Shown: positions 1 to 3,850, counted from the first letter of the stretch. The stretch is 64,000 nucleotides of DNA from Hamiltosporidium tvaerminnensis FI-OER-3-3 (GCA_022605425.2 JAKIMF020000007.1:558001-622000), one strand, 5' to 3'. Notes: generated from the sequence alone by a model not told the origin. Made by a program: numbers and translations.

Positions 1-415
1 CAAAAACCTTAACTGAAATTTACTTTCTTAGAAATTAAAATAGTAAATATGAAACTATATGATAAATTAATAACCTATAAATTCAATTGGTTATTATATT
101 GATAATATCATATATCAAGCAATATATTTCATTGGACACAATAAATCTATAGATTTCAAAACTTTAAATTTTGCTTAAAAAACGAAGTAAAATATAAATA
201 TCTCATTAGGTTTGATTATATAAGATATGATTGCCTATAAATATCAAATTTAAATTTATTTTTCTTAAATGAAAAAAAGATTGAAACATATATTTGCAAA
301 TATAAAATATCAAATAACCAATGTTTAACAAATTCAAAAATGTATTCAAATATGAATTAAGAATCTGAACGAATCATTCGGTTTAAATCCATTAAATTTA
401 CCGTTTAAAATTTAA

Positions 416-486
416 AAGCTCCGCTTGAGATACGAAGAGTGCTAATCTGCAGTTCCTAAGCCCGGATAAAGAAGGAGAGTTGAGCC
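416..486 (+). ncRNA. Twister ribozyme, 3' cleavage-product portion, degenerate copy
   Basis: Order and spacing match the type-P1 twister pattern AACUCC-GCY-[P3]-GCCGG-UCCCAAGC-CCGG-AUAAA-GGAG-GAGGG. Here it reads AAGCTCC-GCT-[AGAT..ATCT]-GCAG-TTCCTAAGC-CCGG-ATAAA-GAAG-GAGAG. Several stems carry mismatches. Confidence 0.65.
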
Positions 487-611
487 TAAGGCAAGCATTT
501 CTATCTCACAAAACCACATTGTTACAAACCAAAACGAAATAATATAAATTAGAAAAATCACTAAAGAAGCTCGGGCTCTATAGGAGCCGTAGCGCCAATT
601 AGTAGTAGTAA
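418..611 (+). mobile_element. Non-autonomous RTE-related retroposon (twister-headed 5' UTR fused to RTE 3' end)
   Basis: GC-richer island between identical 14-bp direct repeats TTTAAAATTTAAAA (404-417, 612-625). 5' part GTTCCTAAGCCCGGATAAAGAAGGAGAGTTGAGCC...AAAACCACATTGTTAC resembles RTE 5' UTRs. 3' end has hairpin GGCTC-TATAG-GAGCC (574-588), then GTAGCGCCAAT and a (TAG)n tail, typical of RTE 3' ends. Confidence 0.8.
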
Positions 612-2344
612 TTTAAAATTTAAAATGTATTAAATTATTTGAATATATAATTGATATAACAAGAATATTAAAAGTACAATTTTATAACGAACGGATTTTT
701 ATTTCCAATCTATTAATATTTATAACAAAACTTTTTTTTTTCAGACTTTTTAATCAAAGTTATAAAATATATGAATTACAATCTTGTATATTTAAAATAT
801 TACTTTTAGGATTAATATATTTAATAAATAATTGAGTAAAAAGTAAATTTATAATTTTTAGTACCACAGCATTTTCTTATGGCTAAGCTTATCAAAATAG
901 AAATGATTTTCTTAAAAAATCTTTTTATAAATATTTTCAAGAAAAATTTTTATTTGAATCAAAGACTAAATAATTTGGAAACACTTAAAAGGTTGATTAA
1001 ATCATCCGAACTAAAAATTTCTCTATAGTATAATTAAATATGTTTAATCGAAATTAATTAACTATCGAATATTTGGGATAAAAGTTACAAAATTATATGA
1101 AAATTAATTAAGATTTAGAGCAAAAACATAATAAATCTTTTTTTAAAAACACGTATAAATTGAATTAACAAGTCTATTCAAGCAATAATAAATTCGTAAA
1201 AAATATTCTGTAAGAAATTTAGAAAAAATGAATTTTCAAATTAACATAAGTTAAGAATCTCTATGTAATTAAGATTTTTAGAAAAAGAACTATTAAAAAT
1301 AAAGATATCAGGTTATTTTTATTCAATATTTAATAATTTAAATTTAACCTACAATAAAGCACAATACTTTATTTTAAATACAAATTGTTGGTTTCGAAAA
1401 ATTTTTAAATCTATAATAGTTACTTTTTTAATGTTTCGTTTGAATTTAATCAGTTCAACTTTAAACTTTTTATAAATTTCAAATTAAAAACTCCAAAATT
1501 AGAAAAATAATTTAAACAATAAAAATATTTTGTATTTTTTACTATTTTAAACCATGCTGAGATTTATATTTTTATGGAAAATAATTTATATAACTAAATT
1601 GAATGTCAAATGAATTTTTTTGATTCCAAAATTTGTATTTATAAATATATGAATCCTTTTATTTTTATGAGTTTTGGTATGAATCCTTTTTTATCAATAG
1701 ATTGGGAAAAAGGCGAAAGTAACGGTAGGAGATTATAGATTTTTTAGAACAAAGCGACATCAATTTTTGAAGAACAGAGCAAGATATTTAAAAACACATG
1801 CAATTATGACAGAAAGCCAATGAAAAACAGAATATATTTTATTAAGAATAGAAAGATATGTATATTTTAATGATAGAAATCCCGTAAGAAAATTAAGTAT
1901 ACTTTCTGAAAAACCTAAATTTTCCCTGGAATCCTATAATTCAAGTATTCAAAACAATTATTTTACACACGAGATAATAAAACAAGGAAATACAGTAGAA
2001 AATAATGCCTTTATAATTTCATTTTTCTGTTTAGATAAAAACGATGCACAAATATCAAAAGAATCCAATGATTTAAACAATGAACTAGGATTTAAAGAAA
2101 ATCGAAAAAAGTTTGAATGAATCATCTAAATTGTAATAAAAGTTATAAAAATCAAAATGGTCTGGTTTATCATCTCAAATATGGCCATCCACTTTTTCAA
2201 ATTGCCAAAAAATATAAGTGTGGTTTTCCAGATTGTAATAAGAAGTATAAAAATTCTAACGGGTTAAAATATCATAGAATTCATGGCCATAAATGAAAAA
2301 TTATAATATAAACCACAAAAAGATATTATTTTATAGGTTATAAT

Positions 2345-2990: not shown

Positions 2991-3850
2991 ATACAAAAAT
3001 ATTGAAGATATATTTATAAATGATTTAAATTTAACAAATAAAATTTGAATTCTATTTGTTTTGCTTTTAAGACAAAAGTATTTATATTGGTCATTATAGT
3101 TTTTCGAAATCCAGAATATTTTTGCCGTAAAATAATCATATATTATATCTTTTGAATTAAAACTATAAATTATAAATTTATTGTTCTCATTTGTTGATTT
3201 CGATTTATCTGGAATATTTTTTTTTCAATAACATTGTAAGAGTTTAGTTTTATTTTCTTGAGATGCGTACAATAGTAAGAATATAAATTATGAAGTTGAT
3301 CTTGTAAGAACGCATGTTAGTTAAAAAAGTTTAATAAAGTTTTCTCTGTAATAGCCATTCTAGTATTTTTATATCATACGTAAATATTCGAATGTATTGA
3401 TTTTATTAGTATTGCTTAATAGAAAAATTTTAAGGAAACAATGATTTAAAATGTAAATTTGATAACTCAGAACATGATCACATATAAAGAATAAGCTTAG
3501 GCTAACTTTTCAAACAATTGTAAAAAAATAAAAGTAATTTTATTATAACATCTTATTTAATAAGCTTGGAAGAGACATAGAAGACGTATAAATGTCTACA
3601 TTCCTCATTGAAATTTTATTATTTATAAGTTATTTTTGTGACCAATTTGTATTTTATAGTCAAGATTATCGTAATACTGAGTAAAAATAGTTGTAATACG
3701 AACTTATATCTTTATAAAAATAACAGAATGATTATTGAGAAATTTGAAAAGAAATGAAAGAATGCGGAATTTTCTAAGAATTTAAAAAAAGCGATTCTAG
3801 AAAATTCTAATTTTTGAAGCGAATAAATTATTTGATGGAATGTATATTAG

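What the first reader, a model, noticed from the sequence alone, without database searches (positions are those of the whole stretch)
404..625. 194-bp retroposon whose 5' end is a twister-ribozyme cleavage product
Seen: a non-coding island between 14-bp direct repeats. It starts (AA)GCTCCGCT, contains TTCCTAAGCCCGGATAAAGAAGGAGAGTTGAGC, and ends in a hairpin plus GTAGCGCCAAT(TAG)n. Known: type-P1 twisters read UAACUCCGCY..GCCGGUCCCAAGCCCGGAUAAAGGAGGAGGG, cleave at U/A, and occur in RTE-clade 5' UTRs; the 3' end here is RTE-like. Inference: the element starts where self-cleavage would leave the RNA, since the 5' strand of P1 is missing. It looks like a minimal ribozyme-released, RTE-mobilised RNA with no coding sequence and no Pol III head, in a probable microsporidian. 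This copy is decayed (P3 partly deleted, P2/P4 mismatches).
Basis: partly seen in the sequence, partly recalled or inferred. Interest (0 to 1): 0.8.

Follow-up and report, generated by a model that had tools for sequence, protein, structure and literature searches.

The report
Twister-headed mini retroposon in a microsporidian
Window 417-611 is one dead copy of a short, gene-less jumping element made from the two ends of an old RTE-like LINE; its 5' end sits at the cut site of a twister self-cleaving ribozyme, which extends a mechanism shown in Schistosoma to a microsporidian and to a non-coding derivative.

Summary
Window 418-611 is a 194-bp non-coding insert between perfect 14-bp direct repeats, with a twister-like core and a hairpin/GTAGCGCCAAT/(TAG)n tail.

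- **Twister signal.** Rfam twister-P1 scores this copy only 24.9 bits (cut-off 67.2). The genome holds at least 26 homologous copies and at least 56 twister heads, the best at 43.9 bits (E 1.7e-7). The family consensus carries the twister core.
- **5' ends.** In 11 of 19 independent copies the target-site duplication beats mismatched controls. In 10 of those 11 it ends within -3 to +2 nt of the predicted cut (or is ambiguous over shared A's). P1 pairing with the flank is at chance level.
- **Origin.** The element is an internal-deletion derivative of a roughly 3.05-kb APE+RT LINE: the LINE's first ~135 nt joined to its last ~65 nt. One decayed LINE copy carries both the twister head and the same tail. 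All LINE copies examined are dead.
- **Relatives.** Intact relatives in other organisms' assemblies carry a twister head (58.6 bits) or the same GCUGUAGCGCC 3' motif.
- **Host.** Hamiltosporidium tvaerminnensis or a very close relative.
- **Precedent.** The mechanism is published for Perere-3 in Schistosoma (Liu 2021). New here are the ORF-less derivative and the phylum.
- **Not shown.** Cleavage itself and RTE-clade membership were not tested.

Other first readers of this scan noted twister-headed LINEs elsewhere in this genome.

The parts
404..417 (+). Upstream copy of the target-site duplication (TTTAAAATTTAAAA). Its last 1-4 A's are ambiguous with the first bases of the element. Bases 412-415 (UUAA) happen to pair with 480-483 as a chance P1.
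412..483 (+). Twister-P1-like ribozyme as aligned by the covariance models. The predicted cut lies between 416 and 417. P2 is 419-422 with 472-475. P3 is about 425-429 with 445-449. P4 is 450-453 with 462-465. The copy is decayed, with mismatches in P2, P3, P4 and T1.
   Evidence: Rfam RF03160 24.9 bits; family model R1 72.2 bits (this copy was in the model's training set)
417..611 (+). The retroposon copy itself (194-195 bp, ORF-less), one member of a family of at least 26 copies.
417..550 (+). Part derived from the LINE 5' end: the twister 3' cleavage product (417-483) plus a conserved post-twister segment (484-550). This segment is also conserved in intact relatives from other organisms.
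   Evidence: blastn to LINE 5' ends L064 215-354 and L066 216-350; L074/L077/L078 5' ends
546..599 (+). Part derived from the LINE 3' end: the last roughly 13 codons of the ORF remnant, hairpin 574-588 and the GTAGCGCCAAT motif 589-599. The deletion junction lies between 546 and 551.
   Evidence: blastn to L064 3213-3276, L067 and L068 3' ends; alignment A2; same motif in L074, L075, L080
600..611 (+). (TAG)n-type simple-repeat tail (TAGTAGTAGTAA).
612..625 (+). Downstream copy of the target-site duplication.

Best explanation
Window 417-611 is a decayed copy of a non-autonomous, ORF-less, promoter-less retroposon family of a microsporidian (Hamiltosporidium tvaerminnensis or a very near relative).

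The family arose by internal deletion of a roughly 3.05-kb single-ORF (APE endonuclease + reverse transcriptase) RTE-like LINE. It keeps only the LINE's first ~135 nt and last ~65 nt.

The head is a type-P1 twister ribozyme lacking its own P1 5' strand. Proposed mechanism:
- When a copy is read through from outside, the ribozyme cuts just 5' of the AAC that precedes P2. This frees an RNA whose first base is the cleavage-site A.
- The LINE's RT recognises the shared 3' end (hairpin, GUAGCGCC, simple-repeat tail) and copies the RNA into a new nicked target.
- This gives 9-15-bp TSDs that abut the cleavage site. The new flank supplies, by chance, whatever P1 5' strand and -1 base the copy will have.

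Shown: the family, its anatomy, the TSD positions, the shared ends with the LINE, the twister homology, and that all copies seen are dead.
Inferred: actual self-cleavage, read-through transcription, trans-mobilisation by the LINE's RT, and RTE-clade membership.
For: 1. Twister homology. There are 31 RF03160 hits in the genome up to 43.9 bits, E 1.7e-7. The 24-copy consensus reads nnnnUAACUCCGCC-P3-GCCGGUCCCAAGCCCGGAUAAAGGAGGAGGGUUG, which is the Rfam core. The proposed pairs form in 71% of cells, against 41-46% when partners are slid.
2. Start at the cut site. 11 of 19 independent short copies have TSDs above the 95th percentile of mismatched controls. In 10 of those 11 the upstream repeat ends at -3 to +2 of the cleavage-site A or runs on ambiguously over shared A's; L022 is a dubious low-complexity match at -16. 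Three weaker TSDs (L006, L021, L036) end at 0 to -2. LINE copies L057 and L060 show the same. P1 pairing with the flank is 49.5%, which is chance level.
3. Partner LINE. Twister-headed copies run about 3.05-3.3 kb. L064 has both the head and the tail. There is an RVT_1 hit. An EN fragment is 99% identical to an H. tvaerminnensis protein that UniRef names endonuclease/exonuclease/phosphatase. The short element maps to the LINE 5' 135 nt plus 3' 65 nt.
4. Intact relatives elsewhere. L077 (926-aa EN+RT ORF) has a twister at 12-96, 58.6 bits, with compensatory changes in P3 and P4. L078 starts inside a twister. L074, L075 and L080 end in GCUGUAGCGCC plus a simple repeat.
5. Precedent. Perere-3 T-variants have TSDs next to the cleavage site, and the TSD forms the P1 5' strand (PMC8501958).
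Against: - No copy in this genome reaches Rfam's gathering score (best 43.9 against 67.2). The window copy scores 24.9 and has mismatches in P2, P3, P4 and T1, so it is very likely inactive.
- Within the genome there is no covariation beyond shuffled controls. This is what neutral decay of dead copies gives, but it is also no support.
- Several copies have 1-3 extra bases, mostly T, between the TSD and the cleavage-site A. T is over-represented at -1 (21 of 31, p 4e-4). So the 5' end is not always exactly the cut. Non-templated addition, target preference or a start just upstream are all possible.
- No RNA data could be obtained.
- Four of the eight non-Hamiltosporidium relatives fetched (L075, L076, L081, L082) show no twister; L080 has only a possible remnant and L074 is cut short at its 5' end.
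- RTE-clade membership rests on architecture only.
Confidence: 0.8

Rival explanations
1. The element is a LINE deletion derivative, but its uniform 5' end comes from transcription initiation (an internal promoter in the head, as Pr77 does in L1Tc) or from another processing step. On this view the twister fold serves something else, such as translation of the LINE, or is a relic.
For: There are extra 1-3 nt, mostly T, between the TSD and the cut site in several copies, and T is enriched at -1. Liu 2021 reports that the cleaved twister supports downstream translation. In L1Tc the same 77 nt is both promoter and ribozyme (PMC3383444).
Against: The 5' junctions cluster at the one bond where a twister cuts. 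The P1 5' strand is absent in all copies. The ORF-less derivative keeps the whole ribozyme although it has nothing to translate. Extra T's fit non-templated A addition to the cDNA end.
Confidence: 0.1
2. The short copies are not a mobilised family. They would be DNA-level products: segmental duplications, or repeated independent deletions inside LINE copies.
For: The window copy and its 99% twin lie in an inverted segmental duplication. L007, L009 and L015 share flanks, and L049/L050 and L054/L055 are duplicates.
Against: At least 16 further copies have unrelated flanks, their own TSDs and the same deletion junction, at 72-79% identity to one another.
Confidence: 0.04
3. The twister resemblance is a chance match in a GC-richer island of an AT-rich genome.
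For: This copy scores 24.9 bits, E 0.03-0.05, far below the cut-off.
Against: Sister copies reach E 1.7e-7. The consensus matches the Rfam core almost base for base. An intact relative scores 58.6 bits, E 5e-11.
Confidence: 0.02
4. The element is a MITE or other DNA transposon.
For: It is short, non-coding and flanked by direct repeats.
Against: There are no terminal inverted repeats. TSD length is variable (9-15 bp). The 3' tail is a simple repeat. Both ends are shared with an RT-encoding LINE.
Confidence: 0.01

Closest known systems
Twister 'T-variant' / Perere-3 (RTE clade) of Schistosoma mansoni (Liu et al. 2021, PMC8501958)
   Same: A twister sits at the extreme 5' end of a single-ORF APE+RT LINE. 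The TSD lies directly next to the cleavage-site A's. The P1 5' strand is supplied by the target. The number of A's at the cut varies. The 3' tail is a simple repeat ((GTAA)n there, (TAG)n here).
   Different: The host here is a microsporidian, not a flatworm. The window element has lost the whole ORF and amplified as a roughly 190-bp non-autonomous family. All copies here are dead. No cleavage assay or RNA data exist here.
NARTc / L1Tc with the L1TcRz HDV-like ribozyme in Trypanosoma cruzi (PMC3185411, PMC3383444, PMC4035085)
   Same: A short truncated partner shares the 5' ribozyme-bearing head and the 3' end with its autonomous LINE. The ribozyme frees the 5' end from co-transcripts.
   Different: The ribozyme class differs (HDV-like, cutting at its own 5' edge, against twister, cutting after P1). 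Pr77 is also a promoter, and none is shown here. The LINE clade differs (ingi/L1Tc).
Canonical LINE-tailed SINEs (tRNA/7SL/5S head plus RTE- or CR1-type tail)
   Same: Short and non-coding. The 3' end is copied from a partner LINE and presumably recognised by its RT. Copies have TSDs.
   Different: There is no Pol III promoter head (ARAGORN and Rfam negative). The head is the LINE's own 5' UTR.
Retrozymes and Penelope-associated hammerhead elements (PMC4918200)
   Same: Non-autonomous retroelements built around a small self-cleaving ribozyme.
   Different: Those use hammerhead ribozymes in LTR-like repeats and have circular RNA intermediates. Here there is a single twister, a linear TPRT-type insertion and no repeat of the ribozyme at the 3' end.

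Membership tests
Twister ribozyme, type P1 (Rfam RF03160) | Covariance-model score at or above the curated gathering score (67.2 bits) | tested here: not met
   Window copy 24.9 bits. Best copy in the genome 43.9. Intact relative L077 58.6. The loss comes mostly from unpaired P1 and decay.
Twister ribozyme, type P1 (Rfam RF03160) | Conserved core nucleotides (UAA, GCC, GCCGGUCCCAAGCCCGGAUAAA, GAGGG) | tested here: met
   The consensus of 24 copies carries all of them. The window copy keeps most but has substitutions (AAG for AAC, GCU for GCC, UUCCU for UCCC, GAGAG for GAGGG).
Twister ribozyme, type P1 (Rfam RF03160) | P2, P3, P4 helices and T1/T2 pseudoknots supported by pairing or covariation | tested here: inconclusive
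   71% of cells pair, against 41-46% when slid, but this is no better than column shuffles. Across species, L077 has a wholly different but fully paired P3 and a G-C to U-A swap in P4. My assignment of T1/T2 partners is from memory.
Twister ribozyme, type P1 (Rfam RF03160) | Closing helix P1 | tested here: not met
   The flank pairs with the fixed 3' strand in 49.5% of cells, which is the chance level for this base composition. This is expected for a 'T-variant' inserted after cleavage.
Twister ribozyme, type P1 (Rfam RF03160) | Site-specific self-cleavage at the U^A bond | not testable with these tools
   Needs an in vitro assay or 5'-OH end mapping.
Twister-headed RTE LINE (Perere-3 type) | Twister at the 5' end of an element that encodes APE and RT | tested here: met
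   This holds for the partner LINE. The window element itself has no ORF and so is a derivative, not a member.
Twister-headed RTE LINE (Perere-3 type) | TSD directly adjacent to the cleavage site | tested here: met
Twister-headed RTE LINE (Perere-3 type) | RTE clade by RT phylogeny | not tested
   Only architecture fits: about 3.05 kb, one EN+RT ORF, a 3' UTR of about 20 nt and a simple-repeat tail. Relatives have 915-1000-aa ORFs on 3.0-3.3-kb contigs.
SINE (canonical) | Internal Pol III promoter head derived from tRNA, 7SL or 5S | tested here: not met
   ARAGORN found 0 genes. Rfam gave only the twister hit in 404-625.
SINE (canonical) | 3' end shared with a partner LINE | tested here: met
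   (L064, L067, L068).

The most novel reading that the evidence does not exclude
A twister ribozyme, plus about 65 nt of LINE 3' end, is enough to make a self-defining parasitic RNA with no promoter and no gene. This would be the first twister-headed non-autonomous retroposon family and the first self-cleaving ribozyme reported in Microsporidia. It belongs to a widespread, so far undescribed RTE-like lineage marked by a twister head and a GCUGUAGCGCC 3' motif. That lineage also occurs intact in other eukaryotes and may have reached the parasite by horizontal transfer.
Probability: 0.5. Interest if true: 0.55.

Novelty: new variant of a known kind. Interest (0 to 1): 0.45.

Why it matters
- **Generality.** It shows that using a twister to set the 5' end of a non-LTR retrotransposon is not a Schistosoma oddity. 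It is a trait of a wider LINE lineage that reaches a fungal-related intracellular parasite.
- **Minimal system.** The ribozyme head alone, joined to the RT-recognition tail, was enough for amplification. That gives a minimal natural system for asking what a stringent LINE RT needs from its template, and how P1-less twisters cut in arbitrary flanks.
- **Annotation.** It explains at least 56 twister-like hits in this genome as transposon heads rather than host ribozymes.
- **Caveat.** The family is extinct here, so the biological effect on the parasite today is probably nil.

Tried and rejected
- **RNA evidence.** The look-up of sequencing runs found no RNA run that holds the stretch. Four RNA runs of the associated species label laid no reads. 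This is no test, because the organism was not in those runs.
- **More genomic sequence.** The roughly 20 extra heads found by model R1 and the intact 915-aa RT ORFs of the genome could not be read.
- **Intact LINE copy.** None was found. Open frames were at most 137 aa in 27 RT-fragment hits and at most 184 aa in the 12 loci read.
- **Endonuclease in Pfam.** Pfam did not recognise the decayed EN pieces even at E 10. The word-based protein search found only the species' own protein.
- **Covariation within the genome.** None beyond shuffles. The 3' hairpin is likewise weak.
- **Whole-element fold.** Not significant, z -1.1.
- **Relatives without a twister.** L075, L076, L080, L081 and L082 gave no twister hit. 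L074 is cut off at its 5' end.
- **Run accessions of the relatives.** Not found in the paper library, so their organisms are unknown.
- **Consensus.** No consensus of the LINE was built.

Full report
**What is at the coordinates.**
One search shows a GC-richer, ORF-less island in 27%-GC sequence.
- TTTAAAATTTAAAA lies at 404-417 and again at 612-625.
- The insert begins (AA)GCTCCGCT.
- It contains the quoted TTCCTAAGCCCGGATAAAGAAGGAGAGTTGAGC.
- It ends with a small hairpin (574-588), GTAGCGCCAAT (589-599) and TAGTAGTAGTAA (600-611).

Rfam's twister-P1 model aligns 412-483 end to end, but at 24.9 bits (E 0.027 in 3 kb; cut-off 67.2). ARAGORN finds no tRNA-like head. The whole element does not fold better than shuffles. 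On this copy alone the twister call would be borderline.

**The family.**
- A DNA search of the window's own genome (21.6 Mb, 17 contigs) finds 26 matches, most at 72-79% identity over nearly the full length.
- The Rfam model finds 31 heads, up to 43.9 bits and E 1.7e-7.
- A model built from 24 heads (A1, R1) finds 56, a lower bound since only 150 of 3335 candidates were scored.
- The 24-copy consensus reads nnnnUAACUCCGCC-(P3)-GCCGGUCCCAAGCCCGGAUAAAGGAGGAGGGUUG. That is the Rfam twister core, with P2 as CUCC/GGAG.
- The first four columns, where P1's 5' strand should be, have no consensus. They pair with the fixed 3' strand in 49.5% of cells, which is what this base composition gives by chance.
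- The proposed P2/P3/P4/T1/T2 pairs form in 71% of cells, against 41-46% with slid partners. They do not exceed column shuffles, as expected for copies that decayed neutrally after insertion.
- My assignment of the T1/T2 partners is from memory of the published structures.

**Where copies start.**
For 19 independent short copies I compared the 30 nt before the predicted cut with the 50 nt after the GCGCCAAT motif, and used all mismatched pairs as controls.
- Eleven copies exceed the controls' 95th percentile and six exceed the control maximum.
- In 10 of those 11 the upstream repeat ends between -3 and +2 of the cleavage-site A, or (L003) runs on ambiguously. L022 is a dubious low-complexity match at -16. 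Three weaker TSDs (L006, L021, L036) end at 0 to -2.
- Positive values are ambiguity from shared A's.
- Negative values are 1-3 extra bases, mostly T.
- Two LINE copies with clear TSDs (L057 with 9 nt, L060 with 13 nt) behave the same way.
- The base at -1 is T in 21 of 31 copies, against 36% expected (p 4e-4). In about half of the well-defined cases that T belongs to the TSD.

Target preference, non-templated A addition to the cDNA end, or selection for a U at -1 could each contribute. I could not separate them.

**The partner LINE.**
- Heads that do not continue into the short element run on for about 3.05-3.3 kb and are alike among themselves at 65-75%.
- One decayed copy (L064, C11:90000-97000, reverse) has both the twister head (element start about 217) and the same hairpin/GTGGTGTCATT/TAG tail at about 3240-3281.
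- Fragments carry an RVT_1 match (E 6e-9).
- An endonuclease piece is 99% identical to an NCBI protein of Hamiltosporidium tvaerminnensis that UniRef calls endonuclease/exonuclease/phosphatase.
- The short element maps to the LINE's first ~135 nt (window 417-550) and last ~65 nt (window 546-611). It is therefore an internal-deletion derivative that then amplified, because copies share the junction but have different flanks and TSDs.
- Reading the 3' part against relatives shows that it covers the last dozen codons, a 3' UTR of about 20 nt and the tail.
- Every LINE copy examined is broken. Open frames are at most 184 aa in the loci read and at most 137 aa in 27 RT-fragment hits.

**Relatives elsewhere.**
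An exhaustive HMMER search with the 184-aa endonuclease piece gives 3704 relatives.
- The best full-length ones are 915-1000-aa EN+RT ORFs on 3.0-3.3-kb contigs, or sit in insect genomes (Diaphorina, Rhodnius) and a ctenophore, at 37-46% identity.
- L077 (926-aa ORF) has a twister at 12-96 scoring 58.6 bits (E 5e-11). It has the same P2 and the same 3' P1 strand. Its P3 is entirely different but fully paired. One G-C to U-A swap lies in P4.
- L078 begins inside a twister.
- L074 begins in the conserved post-twister segment.
- L074, L075 and L080 end in GCUGUAGCGCC followed by (TGA)n or (ATGT)n (L080's contig ends after the motif), matching the motif here.
- Four relatives (L075, L076, L081, L082) show no twister, and L080 only a possible remnant.

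The microsporidian family is thus a dead branch of a wider twister-headed lineage. Its RTE label rests on architecture, not on a tree.

**Host.**
- The SSU rRNA is 1303 nt and matches Rfam's microsporidian model at 1208 bits, beating the other SSU models.
- With the 99% protein match and the published 21.6 Mb / 17-scaffold FI-OER-3-3 assembly (PMC12376958), the genome is H. tvaerminnensis, a Daphnia parasite, or a very near relative.

**What is known.**
- Liu et al. 2021 (PMC8501958) showed that P1-relaxed twister 'T-variants' head Perere-3 (RTE) LINEs in Schistosoma mansoni.
- They cleave in vitro and in reporters.
- The TSDs abut the cleavage-site A's.
- The TSD provides the P1 5' strand.
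- They also cite that cleavage without P1 is possible, if inefficient.
- A short non-autonomous partner sharing a ribozyme head with its LINE is known for NARTc/L1Tc, which has an HDV-like ribozyme (PMC3185411, PMC3383444).
- In the searchable library no paper links twister with microsporidia, and none links twister with RTE outside Liu 2021.

**Verdict.**
- P3 is substituted, not deleted.
- The -1 base here is A.
- The twin copy is a segmental duplicate.

The mechanism is a known one. The ORF-less twister-headed family and the phylum are new. Cleavage, expression and clade remain untested. RNA data could not be had.

Noticed in passing
window 1-2125 and beyond (L001 = C15:556904-560125) versus L002 = C15:524416-527638: An inverted segmental duplication of at least 3.2 kb at 97% identity, about 32 kb apart. 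It carries the element together with its TSDs. Its full extent was not measured.
   Followed up: partly
L007 (C14:1363063-1366245), L009 (C14:68168-71352), L015 (C12:2633024-2636177): Three copies of the short element share the same flanks on both sides (GACAAAAATCTGATAAAAAAG... upstream). One old insertion was therefore re-copied inside a larger repeat unit.
   Followed up: no
L062 (C3:1089300-1096300) versus L063 (C4:305700-312700); L054/L055 (C3:454268 and C3:519306): LINE copies lie within larger duplicated blocks. L062 and L063 are 94% identical over about 5 kb, extending beyond the LINE. Segmental duplication seems common in this genome.
   Followed up: no
L061 4707-5433, L062 4998-5724, L067 1677-2369: A separate repeat of about 700 bp, 84-90% identical in three unrelated loci and not part of the twister LINE.
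   Followed up: no
genome G000, e.g. C13:59462-60142, C4:7827-8510, C9:2559-3242, C12:2315488-2316207: More than 150 RVT_1 matches, many in uninterrupted frames of about 915 aa or about 1255 aa. Other retroelement families here may still be intact, in contrast to the dead twister LINE. None of the ~915-aa ORF matches I compared lies near a hit of model R1.
   Followed up: partly
heads of copies in loci L003-L066, position -1 and the 5' junction: T is over-represented just before the cleavage-site A (21 of 31, p 4e-4). The 1-3 extra bases between the TSD and the element are mostly T. The number of A's at the cut varies (AC, AAC, AAAC, AGAC), as in the Schistosoma T-variants.
   Followed up: partly
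window 484-550; L074 1-50, L077 97-150, L078 36-95, L080 45-95: The segment just after the twister (GGGCUAACAC...CUNUNAAAAC...UUGUUACGAAAC) is conserved across species, with GGG/CCC against AGG/CCU changes around a CUAACAC loop. It may be a second structured element of the 5' UTR.
   Followed up: no
G000 C14:884776-886078(+) and C14:917769-919071(-); C1:628303, C1:1202433, C1:1236878: Five dispersed rRNA units, two of them an inverted pair 33 kb apart. The LSU starts about 105 nt after the SSU.
   Followed up: no
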